Assembly: GCF_052425735.1 (NCBI RefSeq)
Contig: NC_135771.1
Location: 3,968,001 to 4,032,000 of the forward strand
DNA: 64,000 nt
Reading direction: 5' to 3'
DNA from: Oculina patagonica
Taxonomy: Eukaryota
The number at the start of each line of letters is the position of its first letter. Positions within the stretch are counted from its first letter, which is position 1. Below the pieces are notes generated by a model. The model was not told the origin of the DNA. It did no database searches and saw only the letters and a list, made by a program, of their open reading frames with translations. Positions 15,948-35,250 of this stretch are shown one piece after another. Made by a program: the position numbers and the translations under genes.

Positions 15948-16520
15948 TCACTTCTTAGCTGGGGCTTTCTTAGCTGCGGCCTTCTTGGCGGGCTTTTTCG
16001 CTGCGGGTTTCTTGGCCGCTTTCTTGGCGGGCTTTTTAGCTGCGGGCTTCTTCGCTGCTGGTTTTTTAGCTGCGGGTTTCTTTGCTGCTGGTTTTTTAGC
16101 CGCGGGTTTCTTTGCAGCCTTCTTTGCCGCTGGTTTCTTCGCTGCCTTCTTGGCGGCGGGCTTCTTTGGTTTGGCGGCGGGCTTCTTCTTTGCAGCGGGC
16201 TTCTTCTTCGGTTTCTTTTCCTTCTTTGTCGGATCCACCTTGGGCAACTTGAAGGAACCTGAAGCACCAACTCCCTTGGTGTGCACAAGTACTCCTTTGT
16301 CAGCGCCTCTCTTCAAGGCCAACTTCAAGTGCGAGCCTACGTTATCACCAACCTTGTAGTTGGCTTTGATGTATTTCTCGATGGCTTGGCGGGAAGAACC
16401 GTTTCGCTCCTTCAGCGCTGCAATAGCAGCCTTGATCATCTCTATATAAGTTGGATGTTCGGCTGGTTTTGCCGGCTTTTTTGCCGGCTTCTTAGCTGGG
16501 GACTTTGCTGCTTCGGACAT
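15948..16520 (-). CDS. H1: Histone H1, replication-dependent
   Basis: Winged-helix globular domain ([37 protein letters not shown]), KKPAA-repeat tail, intronless, followed by a stem-loop. Confidence 0.97.
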
Positions 16521-23833: not shown

Positions 23834-25169
23834 CAAACTCTTTACGCACGGAAGTAAGGCAGTCAACACTTAAGAAAAGGAGAACGCTGACAGGGGGAGA
23901 AAGTGTTGACTTTCCAGAGCCAGAGGCGGCAGAGCGTTTTGGGACGTGTGTGTGTGTGTGTGTGTGTGTGGGGGGGGGGGGGGGGTAGTATGAGGGGGCT
24001 AAGACTGTCCCAAAAATACTCGGCATTTTTTCATATTTGGAGCTCTTGGAGCAACTTTTTTTCCGTTCTGGCATCTTTTTGTTTTCTGAGCAGTTTCCAG
24101 ACCGAAGATTTTCGAAGATTCTCAGATGTCATTAAAGATGTGAATATTGTTCATCGTGGTGTAAGGGGGATAGGTAATGAACATATTTGGATTCTCAGAT
24201 TGTTTTTCGAAGGCCATATGAACGTCTCCGGTCATTTCTCAAACTTTTCCGAAGATAAACGAAGTTTCCCGAAGACTTCCAAGGAAGTTTCAAAGATGTT
24301 TGAACTCACTCACAAGACGGAATACCTTGACAAACCAATTTTACGCTGCGCTCGCGATATTTTCGACACCAAAACGTGGGAGAGGGCGGTTTGAGCATCC
24401 CAAAACATTTTTGTTTGGGGGGGAGTGCCCCCCCCCTGCTCCGCCGCCTATGCCTTCAGTGGTAAAAGTTGGATTGCATCTATTGCATATGTAAGTTCTA
24501 GATGCATGCATGCGGCAACTTCCCATTATAAAGGCTGATTTCATGTTCAACCACTCAATAACAAATTACTTCTTTTATAAGACATTTATTTTTCTTTAGG
24601 CCCTCTCATACACTGTAGTTTAATGAATGGAAATGATATAACAACTTGACTTGCTAATTATATTAACTAACCTTTCCCTTATAGCTACGTTTTAGGCTTT
24701 AACGTCTCAGCTTGATATAATTTCTATTTCAGTCATAAATGGAGCAAAGATACAATGCTTGTTGAGCCTCATTCAAGGCCAACAACAGATCAGATACATA
24801 TTTAGTTTTTTAAATATTAATCGATTAGTTCTTTACTAAAGTTTATATTTCTCGTTTATGAAAACATTGTGTGCCCTCTTTTTAAGAACGTTGAATACCC
24901 ATAGATTTTGGAGAAATAATTAAAATTAAAGGTTTTTTAAAAACTATTTTTATGTATTCTTATGATAAAATAGATGTTATCATAAAAATAGGATCCTTAT
25001 AATCAACCATAATTGTTATTTTCAACTACTCTAAAAATCAAATTGTTTTTATGCCATAATAAGCAACATAACTTCTATACCCATATATCTTATCTTATAT
25101 ATCTCATATATTTTTTGTTTTCTAGAGGCCTTTTTATCGCTTAGCAGGTTATCCCCCAATGTGCCAATA

Positions 25170-28100
25170 TTAGTTCAAAAATATTTTCAGTTTGGGATTT
25201 TGATTCTGCGTCAGTTTCCAGAGGCGTGTGTCCCAACCAGTAAAGGTAGATGAGGTCTTCAATTCGGTATCGGTTTTTGCACCAAGTGTGTTTGTAGTAC
25301 CGTATTGCTGTTTGCCATAGCTATTGTCTATTCTGCTATAGCGATAATTATAATTTTCTCCGACTAATCCACCCACTCTGTCACTTCCTGAAACCTGTCC
25401 TATGGCATAACATTTTGTAATCGTACCCCAATTGTATCCCACTAACCCGCCAATATACTCCTTGCCTGAAACATTGCCTGTCGCATAGCTATTGTTTATT
25501 TTAACACTACCAGAATGACCACCACCACCACCACTAATGCCCACTAAGCCTCCTATGTAAATCCACCCTGAAACATTGCCTGTCGCATAGCTGCTTAGGA
25601 TCGTGCCAGTAAAGTCTCCCACCAAACCTCCTATATAAATTCTTATTCCTGAAACAGTGCCTGTCGCATGGCACCTTTGGATGGTGCCTCCATATGAAGC
25701 TCCAACCAATCCCCCAACATAGGATCGTCCAGAAACCTTTGCTGTCGCATAGCTATCAGTGATTCTACTATCTGGTTCACCATTGCCAACTAAACCTCCT
25801 ACAGAAAATTTTGTGCCTAAAACTTGTCCTGTGGCATAGCTATTGTCTATTCTGCCATAATTCCGTCCGACTAATCCACCCACTCCGCTTCCTCCTGAAA
25901 CCTGTCCTATGACAAAGCATTTTGTAATTGTACCTTGATTTCTTCCCACTAACCCGCCAATATACAACACCCCTGAAACATTGCCTGTCGCATAGCTATT
26001 GTTTATTTTAACATGGTGTCCAGAACCACTAAAGCCCACTAAGCCTCCTATGTAACGGCGCCCTAAAACATCGCCTGTCGCATAGCTGCTTAGGATCGTG
26101 CCATAATGGCCTCCCACCAAACCTCCTATTTGATTTGCTGTGCCTGTGGTTTTTCCTATTCCTGAAACAGTGCCTGTCGCATAGCAGTTTTGGATCGTGC
26201 CTTGATATAATTTTCCAACCAATCCTCCCACAGCGGATTGTCCAGAAACCTTTGCTGTCGCATAGCTATCAGTGATTCTACTATCTGTGTCACTCAAGCC
26301 AACTAAACCTCCTACGTAATCATATGTACCTAACACTTGTCCTGTAACATAGCTATTGTATATCCTGCCATAATGATGTCCAGCTAATCCTCCTATAAAT
26401 GATGTCCCCTTAACTGATACGTTTTCAAGTCTTAGGTTTTTCACTTGTCCAGTTCTTTCGATCCCCTTAAACAACCCTGTGTTACCACTCCAATGAGTCC
26501 CATTGATCTTCAAATTCAGAATCTTTTTATTGTTCCCATCCAAAATCCCTTCAAAACGTGGCAAAGGAGCAAAGTTAGCAATAGGAGATAGGTCGATGTT
26601 TTGGGTGACTATAAAATATTTGCCTGTATTGTTTTTCCATATGCCTCGTAGTTTTTGCAAGTCGACGATGCTTGCAATTTTATAAGGGTCGTGACTTGTG
26701 CCTTTCCCAGGTCCATCCGTAGCGATACTTCGGCTTGTCACAGGTTTAATGAGTGAAAGTGCTTTGGTACCAGGGGAAGAACAAGCACCGGATTTCATGG
26801 CTGCAATTTCTTGAGTGATCTGAGTTTTCTTTTGTTCAAGCTGCTGGATCTTTGCAGTACACTCCAGTTGGCTTGGGGTTGGATCAACTGCCTTTACTGA
26901 CATTCGAAGAGCTAGAAGTAATGGAAATAAGTGTGATAGATATTTTATGCCTGGTGAATAACTCTGAGTACATTTCAAATTCTTCATTTGTAACTGTCTC
27001 TTAGACAGACTGTCCAATAATCTGGTTGTATAAATTAGGGTGAATGATTTGATTATCGAACTACGAGTGCCGAACAGTTCGATTCGGGACATAAGGTGTA
27101 CAATGGTCTCATAGTGATTTTGTTATGCGCGAGAATCGAGTCTGGAAATTTTTGCGTGATTTCTTTCGATCACTTTTTCGCTAAAAGAAGTCTGACTGGG
27201 TACATGGAATAGAGGTTCGATATATTGTTGAGTCAAGAAACTGTACGTGATCAAACAGTGTGAAATCCCGATTTCTTGAACCTCATGATAACTCAAACCA
27301 AAAGTCATTCTCCCTCCTCAAACACTGTAATTTTACCCTAATTTCTCGAAATACACTCTTTTTTTTTATAAGAATAACAAAATGTTTTGTGAAACATTTG
27401 AGAAGAAAAATAAGCGATAAACAGTTTAGCACGCACAGAATTCTGTGCGTGCTAAACTGTTTATTTAAAATCTTAATATGCTAATATATTATCACACCCT
27501 AGATCACTATATAAGCCTAAACTCCGTATTATAATTTTAACTTGATAATGATGATATGGCGTCATCGAAACGTCGTTCTATTTTCCTATCGCTTATTTTT
27601 CTTCTCAAATTTTTATAAGAACCTTTTTATAAGAACGTCGAGGCTGAAAAAAGGCCAAAATTTAAGAACATCCTAAAAACGTACCCAAGGATGAAATTTG
27701 GTTAACTGACAAATTTTATTTTCCTATTTGTTGTAAGTGACAAATATATGTACGAAATGAATACATCTTCATTCCAATCCTGAACCGAGTAACCAACATT
27801 GTCATCACTCATTGTTGACGTGAACATGTACATTTAGGTTAGGAATGAATTTACTGCAATACCACTTTGTTTATAAAATTTAAAAAATAAGAACATTTAA
27901 AGATCATTATTGGCTCAAATCTTCGAAAAAGTTAAGAACGGTCATTCTCAGTCAAAAGATAAGACGTAAAAAAGAGTGTATCCAAATGTAGAGTAGAGAG
28001 AGAGAGAGAAGTATTAAAAATATATCATTCGAGCTGAATTAATGACTTCGGCACTGATGCAAAGCTGACCATAATTTGCAACAAAGATCTAAATTGACTT

Positions 28101-28439
28101 ACTTTGTCATGACTCATTGTTGACGTGAACATGTACATCTAGGTTAGGAATGAATATGCTGCGATACCACTTTGTTTTTAAAATTTAATAATAAGAACAT
28201 TTTAAGAACATTATTGACTCAAATCTTCGAAAACGTTTAGAACGTTCAGCCTCGGCCGACAAATAAGAAGTTTTTATATATAAAAAAGTGAATCCAAATG
28301 AATAGTAGGGACTGAGAGAAGTATAAAAATATATCATTTGAGCTCATTAAAATTTACCTTTGTTCTTTTTGTTCGTATCTGCCATCGCTTTCACGAAAGT
28401 CAACACAACGACTAGGAAAATAATTTCCTTTAAACGCAT
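25170..28439 (-). CDS. Secreted GLUG-repeat beta-helix protein of prokaryotic type, 2 coding exons, ~607 aa
   Basis: Exon 28439-28358 encodes MRLKEIIFLVVVLTFVKAMADTNKKNK (signal peptide) and ends at a phase-1 donor G|GTAAAT. Acceptor ttatttccattacttctag at 26912 joins in frame to exon 26911-25170. The protein has a GKGTSHDPYKI N-cap, FEGILDGNNKKILNLKI, 13 GGL(V/A)G..I.NSYATG.VSG repeats and a KTDTELK..TFTGWD..W..PKL C-cap. Confidence 0.85.
27525..27600 (+). mobile_element. Penelope-type terminal fragment with variant hammerhead-like core, inside the GLUG intron
   Basis: TTGATAA-T-GATGA-tatggcg-TCATC-GAAACGTCG at 27542-27575. Confidence 0.4.
27800..28345. repeat. Diverged tandem duplication, period ~303 bp, in the GLUG intron
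   Basis: actcattgttgacgtgaacatgtacat.taggttaggaatgaat at ~27806 and ~28112, collinear through aaaaatatatcatt.gagct. Confidence 0.8.
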
Positions 28440-31400
28440 CTTGCTTTTCTTATGGATCACAAACTTGGCTGGCTGACCTAGAATGGAGAAAAAATAACAA
28501 GTTAAAGTTGCATTTTTGTTAACAGAAGAAATAATTGTCCAGAGTTTATTTTAGATGTTTACGTGTCCAATTTTTTAAATGCAACAACTAAAAGTATCAT
28601 GTTATTCGTTTCTAATGAGAACGTCCAATTTTTAGTCTCCGCTGTCACTAGACCTTCTTCCTTTTTAAAGACTTTTACAACACAATATACAACACATTGT
28701 ATAATAACCTGAATTCTACACGCATTTTAATTGGTTCTTACTTGTGATCTATAAGAGTACAGACACATAGATGACGTCACGCGGTAGTGTGACTCGCGCC
28801 CGTGATCAGAGTTCATAGTCCAAATCAGAGTTGTCGGAAAAGTTTTTTAAACTCGCGGGGCCACAACAAAGCAAAAAAGTTAAGTCACCCTAAGTCGTTC
28901 TAAGTTGTTTTATATATAGTATAGATATTTTCTGTAACAATGCTTTATGGTGTACCATGATGATTCCCATGTACATGTATACCACAACTGTACTTAGGTC
29001 GGTCAAAAAATTGCCTTAAGTCGCTCAAAATCGCCCAAAGTCGCCTAAAATCGCCTTAAATCGCCCAAAATCGCCCGTAATTTCGGACAAAGTCGCCTTT
29101 AGTCGCCCAAAGTTACGGCGACTTTGGGTCCCAGAGTAGGCCTACAATGCAACACGTTTGGCAGTCTCCTTTCATATTTATTGCGAACATTTCGACGTCG
29201 CACGGTTTTAATTTTATCTAAAACGTACTTTGGCCGGGACAAGTACCACATTGACAGCCGACTGTTAAAAGAAAACTTTAAAACTTTTACGTCAGTGATT
29301 TACGATGACAAAGTTTCTCAAATAGTGCCTCGAAAAGAAAAAATTCAGTGATTTGGACGTAATCAAACTTTCTGTTGAGGAAAATATTTCACGAAATAGT
29401 GCCGCGAAAAGAAAAATAAACGACATTTTAATTTTAATTTGAAATGGCACTACTTTGTGAAAGATTTCTCGGACAAAGGAGAAAAAGACCGCAAGCCACG
29501 ATATGAAACTTTTGATATATCGGTTTGGTTAGTACATTTTTGTTAAAGACTGGAATATAAGCCATCGGAAGAATTGTTTGCGTGCTCCCTGCAATGCATC
29601 GTGTGTGACGTCGTTGACATTTTCCAAAAAGGCTTTTAAAGTCGTCCTTGTCAATTTAAAAAATCTATCAATCACCTAAAGAGAAAAAAATAAATTAAAA
29701 ATCAAACTTTCTGTTGAGGAAAATATTTCACGAGTATATTCGTAGACATCTAAAATTTAAGTCAAACAATCGGTCGTTTGGAGCAAGAAATGGCGATAAA
29801 CTGCCGTACGGGAGTCCTGTATGAGGGTCGCGTACGCATTTGCGCGCGGGGGGCCGCAAAAGCCTATATATTACATATTATATACACAGTATTCGACCAC
29901 TGAAAAAGGGGACATTATAAAGCGATGAAGTGACGGTTCGTGTTTGGAGTCCTTTGACTTTCAACGCACAAGCTTTAACCATGCAAATTAATTGTGGACA
30001 GGAAGCACATCTGCTACGTATGATCTGTATATTCATAGGCCGGACGACCTAGGCATCTTGTGAATATAGATCTCGCATACCTCGCACAATACTAGCCTAC
30101 ATAGCAAGTCAAGAGCAGCGGGGATGTTCCTCATAATATTTTATTGCCTATTATGCCTACAATCCAAACTTCTCTTCTTTAAAATGAGGAAACTTTGCTT
30201 ATCAAGACACGTCCAAATCACTGAAGCAACGAACTTGGTAAAAATGGTGCGTCTTCATGGGCTTCCAAATACCCTTTTTTAATCGGGCCTTCCCTTCTGG
30301 TAACAAAGCGGCTATGTTACAAGAAAGATGTGCAAGAGAATCATAACTATATGTATCTCAATAATTTTGAGACTTTTATTAAACGGGCAGACAGCTCAAG
30401 GATAAAGTGACTATGAATCCGCACGATCCACAAACAGTAACAGTTAGTGACAAATAGAAAAAAATATTAGAACATAGGCTTATTGGGAGAGAAGGGAAAA
30501 TTTTAACTACAAAAATCGATTGACCATCCATGTACATATCAAAACAGAATAGAAATATCAACAATGATTAAACTTTCGTAAAAGCGTTTTTTCGGAATGC
30601 TAGGGTTTTTTTTTGATAAACAGAGTTCAAGAAGACCCGAAAGGGGTAAAATTGCAATTGAAAAGTCTTTTCTAAACGTATATCTTACCTAATAAATCAT
30701 GAAGCGGGAAAATACCCGGGTTTCCTTACTGCCAGAATCCAAGAGGTAGAATTTTTCATTGAATTTGAAGATAAACCATTTCATTTTATTATCAAATTTA
30801 TTTTCCCTGCGGCTCACCTATGAGTGAAATATGTTTTGCAATCTTATTATTTTTTTAAACGAAATGGAACAGTTTTCAGTGAGAATTTTCCTCGTGTTCT
30901 CATTTGGCAATATCCACGAAAAAGCGAGAAACTTTATTACGTTGCTGACTCACCACAATGTAAGTTTCTTGTTTAGTTTTCCTCCTTCTTCTAAGCCTTC
31001 GTTACTGGTTAGCTCACTGTAGCAAACTGAATGTGATCGGTGGCTTTCTGTAATTTACGAGGTTGTAATTATCAAAGATAAGATATATAACTGAAACCTA
31101 TCAAGTAGGAAAATTGATTTTAAGTGCTGCTTACAACTATCAAGACTTGCTGGCGCCAGCAGAACCTGGAGACAGAGCATGCCCAGTTGCATCCATCTTG
31201 GGTGGTCATCTTAATATTTATGATAACGTGACTTTTCGCCAAGTTAAAATGGAGCAAATTTTAAATTGTTATAAAAACTTCAACTGTAAAAACAGTCTGA
31301 AAGAGTGTACATGCTATTAAACAATCATTACAGTCTTCCCTTTTAGAACTCGTTTAGGGTTAATGCAGTAAAAATGACGCTGAATTTGCAATTTTTAAAC

Positions 31401-33780: not shown

Positions 33781-35141
33781 CATGCATGCATGCGGCAACT
33801 TCCCATCATAAAGCCTGATTCATGTTCAACCACTCAATAACAAATTTCTTCTTTTTCAGACATTTATTTTTCTTTAGGCCCTGTCATACACTGAAGTTTA
33901 ATGAATGGAAATGATTTAACAACTTGACTTGCTAATTATATTAACTAATCTTTCCCTTATAGCTTTATACATTTTAGGCTTTAACGTCTCAGCTTGATAT
34001 AATTTCTATTTCAGACATAAATGGAGCAAAGATACAATGCTTGTTGAATCTCATTCAAGGCCAACAACAGATCAGATACATATTTCTTATTTAGTTTTTA
34101 AAATATTAATCGATTAGTTCTTTACTAAATTTTATATTTCTCGTTTATGAAAACATTGTATGCCCTCTTTTTAAGAACGTTGAATACCCATAGATTTTGG
34201 AGAGATAATTAAAATTAAAGGTTTTTTTTAAAAACTATTTTTATGTATTCTTATGATAAAATAGATGTTATCGTAAAAATAGGATCCTTATAATCAACCA
34301 TAATTGTTATTTTTAACTACTTATAAAATCAAATTGTTTTTTATGCCATAACAAGCAACATAATTTCTACACCCATGTATCGTACCTTATATATCTTATA
34401 TATATTTTGTTTTCTAGAGGCCTTTTTTATCGCTTAGCAGGTTATCCCCCAATGTGCCAATATTAGTTCAAAAATATTTTCAGTTTGGGATATTGATTCT
34501 GCGTCAGTTTCCAGAGGCGTGTGTCCCAACCAGTAAAGGTAGATGGGGTCTTCAATTCAGTATCGGTTTTTGCACCAAGTGTGTTTGTAGTACCGTATTG
34601 CTGTTTGCCATAGCTATTGTCTATTCTGCTATAGCGATAATTATAATTTTCTCCGACTAATCCACCCACTTTGTCACTTCCTGAAACCTGTCCTATGGCA
34701 TAACATTTTGTAATCGTACCCCAATTGTATCCCACTAACCCGCCAATATACTCCTTGCCTGAAACATTGCCTGTCGCATAGCTATTGTTTATTTTAACAC
34801 TACCAGAATGACCACCACCACCACCACTAATGCCCACTAAGCCTCCTATGTAAATCCACCCTGAAACATTGCCTGTCGCATAGCTGCTTAGGATCGTGCC
34901 AGTAAAGTCTCCCACCAAACCTCCTATATAAATTCTTATTCCTGAAACAGTGCCTGTCGCATGGCACCTTTGGATGGTGCCTCCATATGAAGCTCCAACC
35001 AATCCCCCCACATAGGATCGCCCAGAAACCTTTGCTGTCGCATAGCTATCAGTGATTCTACTATCTGAGGAACTCGTGCCAACTAAACCTCCTACAGAAA
35101 ATTTTGTGCCTAAAACTTGTCCTGTGGCATAGCTATTGTCT
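33781..35141. repeat. Segmental duplicate of 24501-25850 (GLUG 3' CDS plus 3' flank)
   Basis: Near-identical and collinear from atgcatgcatgcggcaacttccc to gcatagctattgtcta, same orientation. Confidence 0.95.
34463..35141 (-). pseudogene. 5'-truncated second copy of the GLUG gene, open frame but no start
   Basis: In-frame DNSYATGQVLGTKFSVGGLVGTSSSDSR...PKLKIFLN*; homology stops abruptly at 35141 against a GC-rich, MITE-like fragment. Confidence 0.8.
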
Positions 35142-35250
35142 ACGCGACGCGACGCGCGAGGGTGTCTCGGCCTCGCGTGTCGCGTTTTGTTAAGCGAGAT
35201 GATTTTTTCCCCTGAGGAAAAAAAAACTTAGGGACTACTCCAGTCTCGTC

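What the first reader, a model, noticed from the sequence alone, without database searches (positions are those of the whole stretch)
25330..26370. Conserved-framework / hypervariable-loop architecture in two 513-nt super-repeats
Seen: six GLUG units are duplicated with a 513-nt (171-aa) offset at the LSDT/NGEP loop. Framework DNA is nearly identical (e.g. gctgtcgcatagctatcagtgattctactatc), while residues flanking each GGLVG are largely replaced or change length: YDY/KFS, LSDT/NGEP, QSA/RSY, KLYQ/ASYG, GKTTGTANQ/RIY, GHY/DFT, RRY/WIY, FSGSGHH/ISGGGGGHSGS, VLY/KEY, RNQ/YNW. The variable sites are rich in Y/W/H/R. Inference: these loops line one face of a beta-helix and are under diversifying selection, as in a solenoid recognition receptor (conceptually like lamprey VLRs) built on a borrowed bacterial scaffold.
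Basis: partly seen in the sequence, partly recalled or inferred. Interest (0 to 1): 0.7.

Follow-up and report, generated by a model that had tools for sequence, protein, structure and literature searches.

The report
Fast-evolving binding ridge on coral beta-helix
A stony-coral gene of bacterial origin encodes a secreted beta-helix whose framework stays almost unchanged, while the few residues beside each turn change four to six times faster than silent sites, which is the signature of a surface selected to bind changing targets.

Summary
Window 25170-26911 (-) is exon 2 of a GLUG-repeat gene (Pfam PF07581). It has 13 coils: U0, then a six-coil super-repeat present twice (A 25836-26348, Z 25317-25835). 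Between A and Z the framework codons are 95% identical in DNA and the inter-framework codons 56%.

Diversifying selection is supported by four methods:
- NG86, A vs Z: framework dS 0.10, loop dN about 1.0.
- Parsimony counts on a tree: loop omega about 2-3, framework about 0.5.
- Diversity by codon position: 0.51/0.52/0.27 at hypervariable sites, 0.04/0.04/0.06 in the framework.
- My own maximum-likelihood partition model: loop omega 5.8, or 4.2 with a free loop mutation rate (p 2e-9). Other coral DNA gave 2.5-3.1.

AlphaFold gives a confident beta-helix (pLDDT 95).

Caveats:
- The variable positions are the same ones that vary in bacterial GLUG repeats, so the architecture is inherited. Only the rate and the six-coil duplication are coral-specific.
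- Many variable residues lie in short strands beside the GG turn, not in loops.
- Only seven germline copies exist and no donor cassettes were found, so the system is not VLR-like.
- The ligand and function are untested.

Earlier scan notes cover this same window only.

The parts
25170..26911 (-). Exon 2 of GLUG gene G1 (stop codon 25170-25172). It encodes the coiled-coil/Cys neck, the N-terminal cap, 13 GLUG coils and the C-terminal cap.
   Evidence: ORF. Pfam Glug x11, E 7.6e-59. Acceptor ...cttctag|CT at 26912/26911.
28358..28439 (-). Putative exon 1. ATG at 28439, signal-peptide-like MRLKEIIFLVVVLTFVKA..., donor G|GTAAAT, phase 1, in frame with exon 2.
   Evidence: A contig of run X21 (RNA by guess only) lies at 28368-28476, with no depth at 26936-27177. 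The NCBI model P0001 of a paralogue has a similar spliced leader.
26721..26903 (-). Neck, aa 64-124. A short heptad-like stretch bracketed by Cys (LECTAKIQQLEQKKTQITQEIAAMKSGAC), then a linker.
   Evidence: Sequence. Longer coiled-coil-like N-termini occur in Montipora and Porites homologues. The trimer prediction gave no verdict.
26421..26720 (-). N-terminal cap of the beta-helix, aa 125-224.
   Evidence: It aligns to PDB 3n6z residues 42 onward. Weak Peptidase_M26_N match, E 0.01, below the cut-off. High pLDDT in AF2.
26349..26420 (-). Coil U0, aa 225-248 (type-6-like, GGLAG).
25836..26348 (-). Super-repeat A: six coil types 1-6, aa 249-419, 513 nt. Variable segments: L1 at 26316-26327, 26232-26240, 26130-26159, 26052-26060, 25962-25970, 25884-25892. 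L2 at 26283-26297, 26202-26213, 26103-26111, 26013-26033, 25935-25943, 25857-25865.
25317..25835 (-). Super-repeat Z: six coil types 1-6, aa 420-592, 519 nt. Variable segments: L1 at 25803-25814, 25719-25727, 25635-25646, 25557-25565, 25455-25463, 25377-25385. L2 at 25770-25784, 25689-25700, 25608-25616, 25506-25538, 25428-25436, 25338-25358.
25173..25316 (-). C-terminal cap, aa 593-640 (GKQQYGTT...KTDTELK..STFTGWD..WKL..PKLK).
   Evidence: Conserved in all paralogues and other corals. AF2 shows helices at the end.
34463..35149 (-). G7: a 5'-truncated paralogue holding only super-repeat Z and the C-terminal cap. It is 96% identical to G1.
   Evidence: (L007), and Pfam Glug E 1.1e-27.

Best explanation
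G1 is one of a small tandem family of secreted, intron-bearing coral genes derived from a prokaryotic GLUG-repeat beta-helix protein.

Each roughly 26-residue coil has a framework, ATGxVSG ... h-GGLVG ... GxIxxCY, that builds the helix core. In the linear sequence the GG corner is flanked by three positions before the hydrophobic residue (L1) and by positions +1 and +3 after GGLVG (L2). A conserved Asn, Ser or Leu sits between those two L2 positions. In a regular solenoid, identical register positions stack, so these residues should form a continuous Tyr/Ser/Arg/Asp-rich ridge about 13 coils long.

A six-coil block was duplicated within the robust-coral lineage. Since then the ridge residues have been replaced by positive (diversifying) selection, both between the two halves of each gene and among paralogues. 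The framework and the single-copy N-terminal domain diverged only at about the silent-site rate or below. The family also shows birth-and-death turnover: three open copies and four truncated or stop-containing copies.

The most likely function is an extracellular binding protein whose ridge recognises variable non-self ligands. Microbial surface glycans or proteins are the leading guess.

Shown: the repeat anatomy, family membership, predicted fold and omega above 1 at register-defined sites.
Inferred: outward orientation of the ridge, secretion, binding and the identity of the ligand.
For: 1. Anatomy. Thirteen coils in six types, each type with its own framework codons. These are nearly invariant across 14 super-repeats from seven paralogues, while L1 and L2 differ in sequence and length.
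2. Pairwise NG86, A vs Z. Framework dS 0.101, dN 0.035. Equal-length loops dN 1.0. Fisher p 3.8e-11.
3. Independent clock. The single-copy N-terminal domain has dS 0.10 between G1 and G3 or G6 and 0.12-0.21 to other coral DNA, matching framework dS. Loop dN of 0.55-1.0 is therefore 5-10 times the silent rate.
4. Parsimony counts on the tree. Framework omega about 0.5. Loop omega 1.8-2.1 on the loops' own dS (p 9e-4 to 5e-5). Hot positions are L1 p0-p2 and L2 p0, p2 and p3. L2 p1 is conserved.
5. Diversity by codon position. 0.514/0.520/0.265 at hypervariable sites, against 0.042/0.040/0.064 in the framework.
6. ML MG94xHKY partition model.
   - Loop omega 5.8 (2dlnL 168).
   - With a free loop rate: omega 4.2, rate 1.47, 2dlnL 35.8, p 2e-9.
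   - Similar on an alternative tree, and for the single A/Z pair (omega 12-15, p 6e-4 to 9e-14).
   - Framework negative controls give 0.27-0.83.
7. Replicate on DNA from another coral assembly and a coral metagenome. Loop omega 2.5-3.1, p 2e-7 and 8e-4.
8. Fold. AF2 pLDDT 95.2, pTM 0.93, a beta-helix. Best PDB match 3n6z, then tailspikes, lyases and adhesins.
9. Eukaryotic gene structure and possible expression.
Against: - No coordinates were available, so the claim that the variable residues form one exposed ridge rests on register logic and DSSP only.
- The same register positions are the most variable in 914 bacterial GLUG coils. Low constraint there is a family property, and only the rate argument shows selection.
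- The tree of super-repeats is star-like with weak support, and hybrid coils in another coral show recombination, which violates the single-tree assumption.
- My likelihood code is home-made, though it was checked with controls and three other methods.
- The most recent copy pairs (G1/G2, G1/G7; dS 0.02-0.07) give loop omega of only 1.3-1.8, not significant.
- The pair G5 against L015, which looks like an orthologous pair, gives 1.2-1.5. Selection therefore looks episodic.
- Four of the seven copies are defective.
- Expression rests on a run whose RNA nature is a guess, and on contigs that may come from paralogues.
- No binding or ligand evidence exists.
Confidence: 0.5

Rival explanations
1. 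The selection is the same but the partner is different. The ridge is diversified in a conflict or recognition system that does not involve microbes: colony allorecognition, gamete recognition, or a venom/defence effector acting on prey, predators or competitors.
For: Omega above 1 at a defined surface, tandem birth-and-death clusters and secretion are equally typical of allorecognition loci, gamete-recognition proteins and toxins. Beta-helix structural neighbours include adhesins and polysaccharide-binding tailspikes. These indicate binding, but not to what.
Against: Nothing distinguishes this from the microbial-ligand reading. There are only three open copies. No toxin or enzyme domain is present. 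No tissue-resolved expression data were reachable.
Confidence: 0.3
2. Concerted evolution. The loops are old and drifted neutrally, and repeated gene conversion among coils, super-repeats and paralogues has homogenised only the framework. This would make framework dS misleadingly small.
For: - Framework dS is flat (0.05-0.19) for almost every pair of super-repeats, whatever the gene or position, and the framework tree is star-like.
- Two length forms of the type-3 L1 loop (10 and 13 residues) are shared across species, so some loop lineages are older than the framework tree suggests.
- G3 carries the same RNR loop in both halves.
- Hybrid coils prove exchange at GGLVG.
Against: - The single-copy N-terminal domain gives the same dS as the framework, both within the genome and across species.
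- Each coil type keeps its own private synonymous codons, so coils of different type are not converting each other.
- Framework blocks are only 15-21 nt, separated by 9-33 nt loops. Conversion tracts that spare every loop in 12 coils would themselves require selection for loop diversity.
- Omega of 4.2 holds on the loops' own synonymous rate.
Confidence: 0.1
3. Mutational artefact. Loop DNA mutates faster through slippage in GGT/AGT runs, complex multi-nucleotide events or micro-conversion from unsampled copies, and this inflates apparent dN without selection.
For: - Three of 12 loop pairs change length, and one is a (GGT)n run.
- The NGEPD loop of G1 differs at 7 of 12 nt from G2, and G7 carries G2's residues there, inside sequence that is otherwise 96-97% identical. 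That looks like one complex event.
- The loops' apparent synonymous rate is 1.5-2 times the framework's.
Against: - With a free loop rate the multiplier is only 1.4-1.8, and omega stays at 3.9-5.2.
- Within hypervariable codons, positions 1 and 2 vary twice as much as position 3.
- Conserved codons inside the loops (the Asn/Ser/Leu at L2 p1) evolve at framework rates.
- The NGEPD sequence has no other copy in the assembly.
- The tests used only equal-length loops.
Confidence: 0.07
4. Decaying relic of a horizontal transfer. The family has no function and is drifting, so the variable sites simply reflect lost constraint.
For: Four of seven copies are truncated or carry stops. The N-terminal domain has omega of about 0.7-0.9. 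No RNA run is on record as a holder.
Against: - Neutral decay predicts omega near 1 everywhere and loop dN equal to dS (about 0.1). Observed framework omega is 0.27-0.58 and loop dN is 0.55-1.0.
- Three long ORFs stay open.
- The family persists with the same architecture in several coral species.
- A canonical intron and a signal-peptide exon have been acquired.
Confidence: 0.03

Closest known systems
Prokaryotic GLUG-repeat beta-helix proteins (Pfam PF07581). Examples are the N-terminal domain of M26 IgA1 proteases (PDB 6XJA, 7JGJ) and the Bacteroides ovatus BACOVA_03286 domain (PDB 3N6Z).
   Same: - Same repeat family by HMM (E 7.6e-59).
- Same predicted fold.
- Same N- and C-terminal capping segments.
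- Same register of conserved (hGGLVG, N at +6, I, C/S-Y) and variable (-4 to -2, +5, +7) positions.
   Different: - Encoded in an animal chromosome with a spliced signal-peptide exon and a Cys-bracketed neck.
- Six differentiated coil types are arranged as a super-repeat that is duplicated or triplicated.
- The variable positions evolve at omega 4-6 among young paralogues.
- No protease or other catalytic domain is attached.
Germline solenoid recognition proteins under positive selection at exposed repeat positions, such as plant PGIPs and the NLR/RLP leucine-rich repeats (from general knowledge).
   Same: - A repeat scaffold with an invariant core.
- Omega above 1 confined to a few register-defined positions per repeat.
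- Tandem clusters with birth-and-death and unequal crossing-over.
- Variation in repeat number.
   Different: A different fold (right-handed GLUG beta-helix, not an LRR horseshoe), bacterial ancestry, only about seven copies, and no ligand or signalling partner known.
   Same: A solenoid with a conserved framework and hypervariable residues at fixed repeat positions. The variable sites are rich in Tyr, Ser, Arg and Asp, like antigen-binding sites.
   Different: There is no somatic assembly. Only seven germline copies exist at two loci, no cassette arrays were found, and a unique loop has no donor in the genome. The scaffold is not an LRR. The diversity is evolutionary, not somatic.
Bacterium-derived genes domesticated by cnidarians (from general knowledge), for example pore-forming toxins and the poly-gamma-glutamate synthase of nematocysts.
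   Same: A prokaryotic gene fixed in a cnidarian lineage that acquired an intron and a secretion signal and expanded by tandem duplication.
   Different: This one is a non-enzymatic repeat scaffold. Its salient feature is site-specific positive selection. I found no publication on it.

Membership tests
Pfam Glug (PF07581) repeat proteins | Repeated matches to the 28-residue GLUG HMM above the gathering score | tested here: met
   192.6 bits against a cut-off of 20.5, 11 stretches. The genome-wide scan finds the family only at the C14 cluster and on C9.
Pfam Glug (PF07581) repeat proteins | Right-handed beta-helix fold like the solved GLUG-containing domains | tested here: met
   AF2 pLDDT 95.2, pTM 0.93. 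Foldseek best hit 3n6z (E 2.2e-7, prob 1.00). IgA1 protease entries 6xja, 7jgj and 6xjb have prob 0.99-1.00. Sequence hit to 3n6z at E 2.2e-8.
Pfam Glug (PF07581) repeat proteins | M26-type N-terminal cap preceding the repeats | tested here: inconclusive
   Peptidase_M26_N scores 15.5 bits against a cut-off of 27.7, E 0.01. However, aa 129-224 align to the cap of 3n6z.
VLR-type somatically assembled solenoid receptors | An incomplete germline gene flanked by large arrays of donor cassettes used for somatic assembly | tested here: not met
   Seven copies in 529 Mb, three of them with long open reading frames. The 24-nt NGEPD loop context has no second copy at up to 2 mismatches.
VLR-type somatically assembled solenoid receptors | Leucine-rich-repeat scaffold | tested here: not met
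   Pfam finds only Glug. The fold is a beta-helix.
VLR-type somatically assembled solenoid receptors | Somatic sequence differences between cells of one individual | not testable with these tools
   Only Logan contigs were available, with no raw reads or single-cell data.
Germline recognition families under diversifying selection (PGIP/NLR-LRR-like logic) | Omega significantly above 1 at register-defined positions, with omega below 1 in the framework | tested here: met
Germline recognition families under diversifying selection (PGIP/NLR-LRR-like logic) | Selected positions are solvent-exposed and contiguous on the structure | tested here: inconclusive
   Register and DSSP place them in strands b2 and b3 and the turns flanking the GG corner. 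The tools returned no coordinates.
Germline recognition families under diversifying selection (PGIP/NLR-LRR-like logic) | Tandem cluster with birth-and-death and repeat-number change | tested here: met
   Six copies lie within about 70 kb on C14 and one on C9. They carry 1, 2 or 3 super-repeats, and four copies are truncated or stop-containing.
Germline recognition families under diversifying selection (PGIP/NLR-LRR-like logic) | Demonstrated ligand binding by the variable surface | not testable with these tools
   This needs recombinant protein and binding assays.
Diversity-generating retroelement targets | A nearby template repeat and reverse transcriptase, with changes confined to template adenines | tested here: not met
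   Variable sites are spread over 1 kb in 24 short patches, not in one variable repeat. G2 and G1 differ at the NGEPD loop by C>A, G>T, A>G, T>G, C>A, C>A and T>C, which is not adenine-specific. The truncated copy G7, the only candidate template in the window, carries G2's residues (TSSSD) at that loop. A reverse transcriptase was not searched for.

The most novel reading that the evidence does not exclude
Robust-clade stony corals have turned a horizontally acquired bacterial GLUG beta-helix into a germline-diversified extracellular recognition molecule. In this reading the duplicated six-coil halves and the tandem paralogues each present a different Tyr/Ser/Arg/Asp-rich ridge for binding microbes or conspecific tissue. 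That would be a new scaffold class for animal non-self recognition, alongside Ig, LRR, FREP and C-type lectin systems.
Probability: 0.35. Interest if true: 0.8.

Novelty: new variant of a known kind. Interest (0 to 1): 0.64.

Why it matters
- Corals lack adaptive immunity, yet they must discriminate symbionts, commensals, pathogens and neighbouring colonies. The molecules that give this specificity are largely unknown.
- Here a secreted repeat protein of bacterial origin shows one of the clearest signatures of diversifying selection: omega 4-6 at fixed register positions, against 0.3-0.6 in the framework.
- The closest named database entries are from Oculina patagonica, the classic model for Vibrio-induced bleaching. 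If this is that species, the family is a concrete and testable candidate for a specificity determinant.
- It is also a clean example of what happens to a horizontally transferred scaffold after domestication. The scaffold gained an intron, a signal peptide, a neck, a super-repeat duplication and a tandem expansion. Selection then acted on exactly the positions that were already tolerant of change in bacteria.
- A practical point: the NCBI model LOC144639076 fuses three paralogues, so annotation-based analyses will misread this family.

Tried and rejected
- Trimer prediction. Complex prediction on three copies of the neck (aa 64-125) gave no verdict (score 0.13, mark 0.32). It says nothing for or against oligomerisation.
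- Coordinates. The AF2 coordinates could not be read, so variable sites could not be mapped in 3D.
- DNA of other corals. The look-up of encoding contigs had no record for P0005 and P0012 and no DNA for P0009.
- Reads.
  - Only Logan contigs were available.
  - They are short, and those at 90-95% likeness may come from paralogues.
  - I therefore did not use them for allele calls, and I treat the depth profile of X21 as suggestive only.
- Literature. Searches for GLUG with coral, 'GLUG motif', Bcell_0380, and GLUG with horizontal transfer and Cnidaria found nothing on this family.
- Cassette-donor idea.
  - At the one loop where they differ, the truncated copy G7 carries the TSSSD residues that G2 also has, and G3 has the close form TSSLD.
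  - The state shared by the other copies is probably ancestral, so G1's loop would be the derived one.
  - G1's loop has no other copy in the genome.
- DGR-type mutagenesis. Rejected because the changes are not adenine-specific and the variable sites are dispersed.
- Failed run. The first negative-control run of my likelihood code failed numerically. I repeated it after clipping the transition probabilities.
- TRF misses the 513-nt repeat because its longest period is 500.
Full report
**Where and what**

The window is a stretch of a 529-Mb eukaryotic genome, G000 contig C14. GC content is about 38%. Long ORFs are sparse, and an H1 linker-histone gene lies at 15948-16520.

The finding lies inside a 640-aa ORF on the minus strand, 25170-27092. 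It carries 11 matches to the Pfam GLUG motif (PF07581, E 7.6e-59).

The closest named database proteins are from the stony coral Oculina patagonica. One of them, P0001 (LOC144639076, 940 aa), is visibly a chimera of three of this genome's paralogues. The genome is therefore that species or one very near it.

All other strong hits are unnamed coral-like sequences, Montipora and Porites proteins, or prokaryotic GLUG proteins at 35-48% identity, many from Planctomycetota.

**Checking the observation**

The repeat finder gives three collinear direct-repeat blocks at offsets 513, 507 and 495 nt, with 83-85% identity. TRF misses them because its longest period is 500.

I parsed the protein into 13 coils: U0, then six coils of distinguishable type (super-repeat A, aa 249-419), then the same six types again (super-repeat Z, aa 420-592).

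Each coil can be written F1 (ATGxVSG) - L1 - F2 (h-GGLVG) - L2 - F3 (GxIxxCY). I fixed this split from the repeat pattern after seeing the G1 coils, and before any rate was computed.

Between A and Z, the 120 framework codons are 95% identical in DNA. The inter-framework codons are 56% identical, and three of the 12 loop pairs differ in length. The only corrections are that Z is 519 nt and that the enrichment is mainly Y, S, R, D and G.

**The family**

The genome holds seven copies.
- G1: the window gene.
- G2: 97% identical, inverted, about 35 kb away.
- G3: 80% identical.
- G4: truncated after the first super-repeat.
- G6: three super-repeats and one in-frame TGA.
- G7: window 34463-35149, holding only super-repeat Z and the tail.
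- G5: on contig C9, three super-repeats, with stops upstream.

Laying all 14 super-repeats side by side shows the following.
- Each coil type has its own private framework codons. For example, GGLVG is attggcgggttagtggga in type 5 and gtgggtggattagtcgga in type 6. These are almost invariant across every gene and every super-repeat.
- L1 and L2 differ nearly everywhere.
- One position inside L2 is conserved: Asn in types 5 and 6, Ser in types 1 and 4, Leu in type 2.

**Is it selection?**

Several independent measures agree.

1. NG86 for A vs Z of G1 gives framework dS 0.101 and dN 0.035. Equal-length loops give dN about 1.0. Fisher p is 3.8e-11. Nearly all 91 super-repeat pairs behave alike. 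The exceptions are the very recent pairs and a few comparisons within or involving G5.
2. The single-copy N-terminal domain (168 codons) is an independent clock. Its dS is 0.10 for G1-G3 and G1-G6, 0.09-0.16 to another coral assembly, and 0.18-0.24 to a coral-metagenome scaffold. These values match framework dS. Loop dN of 0.55-1.0 is thus 5-10 times the silent rate.
3. Parsimony counts on an ML tree give framework omega of about 0.5. Loop omega is 1.8-2.1 on the loops' own synonymous changes (binomial p 9e-4 to 5e-5). The hot positions are L1 p0-p2(3) and L2 p0, p2 and p3. L2 p1 is cold.
4. Pairwise diversity by codon position is 0.514/0.520/0.265 at hypervariable codons and 0.042/0.040/0.064 in the framework. 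This reverses the usual third-position excess.

| Data set and setting | Framework omega | Loop omega | Loop rate | 2dlnL vs omega = 1 | p |
|---|---|---|---|---|---|
| 14 super-repeats, shared silent rate | 0.54 | 5.8 | 1 (fixed) | 168 | 1.8e-38 |
| 14 super-repeats, free loop rate | 0.58 | 4.2 | 1.47 | 35.8 | 2e-9 |
| Framework-only tree, free loop rate | 0.57 | 3.9 | 1.79 | 34.5 | 4e-9 |
| A/Z pair alone | 0.39-0.40 | 12-15 | 1 (fixed) or 1.25 | 55.5 / 11.7 | 9e-14 / 6e-4 |
| Other coral DNA | 0.53-0.56 | 2.5-3.1 | 1 (fixed) or 0.77 | 27.1 / 11.2 | 2e-7 / 8e-4 |

   - Negative controls that partition the framework alone give omega 0.56, 0.27 and 0.83.
   - The other coral DNA was two contigs of assembly GCA_044670265.1 and one coral-metagenome scaffold.

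**Limits of the selection result**

- The super-repeat tree is star-like.
- Hybrid coils in the other coral join a type-3 front to a type-1 back at GGLVG. Recombination therefore occurs and the single-tree assumption is imperfect.
- The youngest pairs (G1/G2, G1/G7) give loop omega of only 1.3-1.8, not significant.
- The pair G5 against L015, which looks like an orthologous pair, gives 1.2-1.5. Diversification looks episodic, concentrated after duplication in the C14 cluster.

**One striking local event**

The type-1 L2 loop of G1-Z is NGEPD (AAT GGT GAA CCA GAT). G2 has TSSSD at that loop (ACG AGT TCC TCA GAT), and G7 has the same residues. G3 has TSSLD.

That is 7 of 12 nt changed against G2, inside copies that are otherwise 96-97% identical. 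The G1 version has no second copy in the assembly. This argues against a cassette-donor role for G7. How the change arose remains unexplained.

**Structure**

AlphaFold2 on aa 125-640, with a 50-sequence alignment, gives pLDDT 95.2 and pTM 0.93. The model is a regular stack of short strands.

Foldseek's best solved match is 3n6z, a GLUG-containing putative IgA1-protease domain (E 2.2e-7). Generic beta-helix proteins follow: capsule lyases, phage tailspikes, antigen 43, PfbA and IgA1 proteases. phmmer against PDB sequences agrees.

The tools gave no coordinates. Overlaying DSSP on the coils shows the following.
- L1 p1-p2 plus the hydrophobic residue and the first Gly form one strand.
- G-L is the turn.
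- V-G-L2p0-L2p1 form the next strand.
- L2 p2 and F3 p0 form the following turn.

Many 'loop' residues are therefore strand residues flanking the GG corner. True loops exist only where L1 or L2 is long, and those have lower pLDDT. In a regular solenoid equal register means equal angular position, so the variable residues must stack into stripes on either side of one corner. Whether they point outward is inferred from their composition, not shown.

**What is inherited and what is new**

In 914 regular coils from 85 prokaryotic homologues, Shannon entropy peaks at -4, -3, -2 and at +5, +7 relative to GGLVG. Asn at +6 is conserved, and Tyr is the commonest residue at -2 and +5.

These are exactly the coral hypervariable positions. 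The framework/variable architecture and its Tyr bias are therefore properties of the bacterial repeat.

The coral-specific features are:
- differentiation into six coil types, and duplication of that block. Identity between coils peaks at lag 6 only in corals, and no such preference appears in bacteria. The Montipora and Porites proteins read (P0028, P0071, P0082) are 440-472 aa and hold a single block;
- the rate of replacement;
- the eukaryotic gene structure.

**Gene structure and expression (checked only in passing)**

Upstream on the minus strand an ATG at 28439 opens MRLKEIIFLVVVLTFVKA.... It ends at a G|GTAAAT donor at 28358/28357. A pyrimidine-rich ...cttctag| acceptor at 26912 joins it in frame to exon 2 at 26911.

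Contigs of run X21 cover 25121-26935 at word depths of 23-1248 and cover 28368-28476. They leave 26936-27177 empty. The two DNA runs instead pile up on an intronic repeat at 27299-28024. X21 is RNA only by the tool's guess. This fits a spliced, expressed, secreted product, but it is suggestive only.

The mature N-terminus has a short heptad-like stretch bracketed by cysteines. A trimer prediction gave no verdict.

**Reading**

The most economical explanation is a secreted beta-helical binding protein whose ridge beside the GG corner is under diversifying selection. The two halves of each gene and the tandem paralogues offer different ridges.

Microbial ligands are my leading guess. Allorecognition, gamete recognition or a defence effector would leave the same signature.

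Three rivals fit less well.
- Concerted evolution of the framework over old loops is disfavoured by the N-terminal clock, by type-private synonymous codons, and by the 15-21-nt scale of the framework blocks.
- Loop-specific hypermutation is disfavoured because the fitted rate excess is only 1.4-1.8-fold and omega stays near 4.
- Neutral decay is contradicted by framework omega below 1 together with loop dN far above dS.

The VLR comparison is an analogy only. There are seven germline copies and no cassettes. The nearest mechanistic parallel is positive selection on exposed repeat positions in germline LRR proteins.

I found no publication on GLUG genes in corals.

Earlier scan notes on this same window exist for the signal-peptide exon, the truncated copy and the histone cluster. 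None concern other DNA.

Noticed in passing
P0001 (NCBI LOC144639076) against L003, L006 and L002: The 940-aa NCBI gene model is a chimera. It joins the front of paralogue G3 to parts of G6 and to the back of G2 through false 'introns' placed between near-identical framework blocks. Annotation-based counts and alignments of this family will be wrong.
   Followed up: partly
window 25770-25784 (-): The NGEPD loop of G1 differs at 7 of 12 nt from G2, and G7 carries G2's TSSSD residues there, inside copies that are otherwise 96-97% identical. The sequence has no other copy in the genome. It may be a single complex mutation or an unsampled donor. Unexplained.
   Followed up: partly
window 28358-28439 (-) and 26911/26912: A putative first exon encodes a signal peptide (ATG at 28439, donor G|GTAAAT). 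It is spliced in phase 1 to the GLUG exon across a 1446-nt intron. A contig of a possibly RNA run covers it.
   Followed up: partly
window 27299-28024: This stretch inside the putative intron has word depths of thousands in the DNA runs (up to 35,000), against tens to hundreds on the gene. Many joints and loose ends are present. It is a high-copy interspersed repeat.
   Followed up: no
window 34463-35149 (-): G7 is a 5'-truncated GLUG copy holding super-repeat Z and the C-terminal cap. It is preceded by unrelated sequence in the same frame. At the NGEPD loop it carries the TSSSD residues that G2 also has.
   Followed up: partly
L006:2752-2754: Paralogue G6 has three super-repeats and a single in-frame TGA replacing the second Gly codon of one GGLVG (VG*LVG). 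It is a very young pseudogene, a polymorphism or an assembly error.
   Followed up: no
L013:3001-5733: In another coral assembly a 910-aa family member has an irregular coil order (1-2, 1-2-3-4-4-5-6, 1-2, 1-2-3-4-5-6, 1-2-3-4-5-6). It also has hybrid coils with a type-3 front and a type-1 back. This is direct evidence of unequal crossing-over at the conserved GGLVG DNA.
   Followed up: partly
window 15948-16520 (-): A 190-aa ORF is a linker histone H1 (Pfam PF00538, E 1.3e-31). It belongs to the histone cluster that another note describes between the GLUG paralogues.
   Followed up: no
window about 23900-24000: A (GT)n/(CA)n microsatellite next to a poly-G/poly-C run. It translates as THTHTH and CVCVCV with a poly-Pro or poly-Gly run in the listed ORFs. 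Ordinary eukaryotic simple repeat.
   Followed up: no
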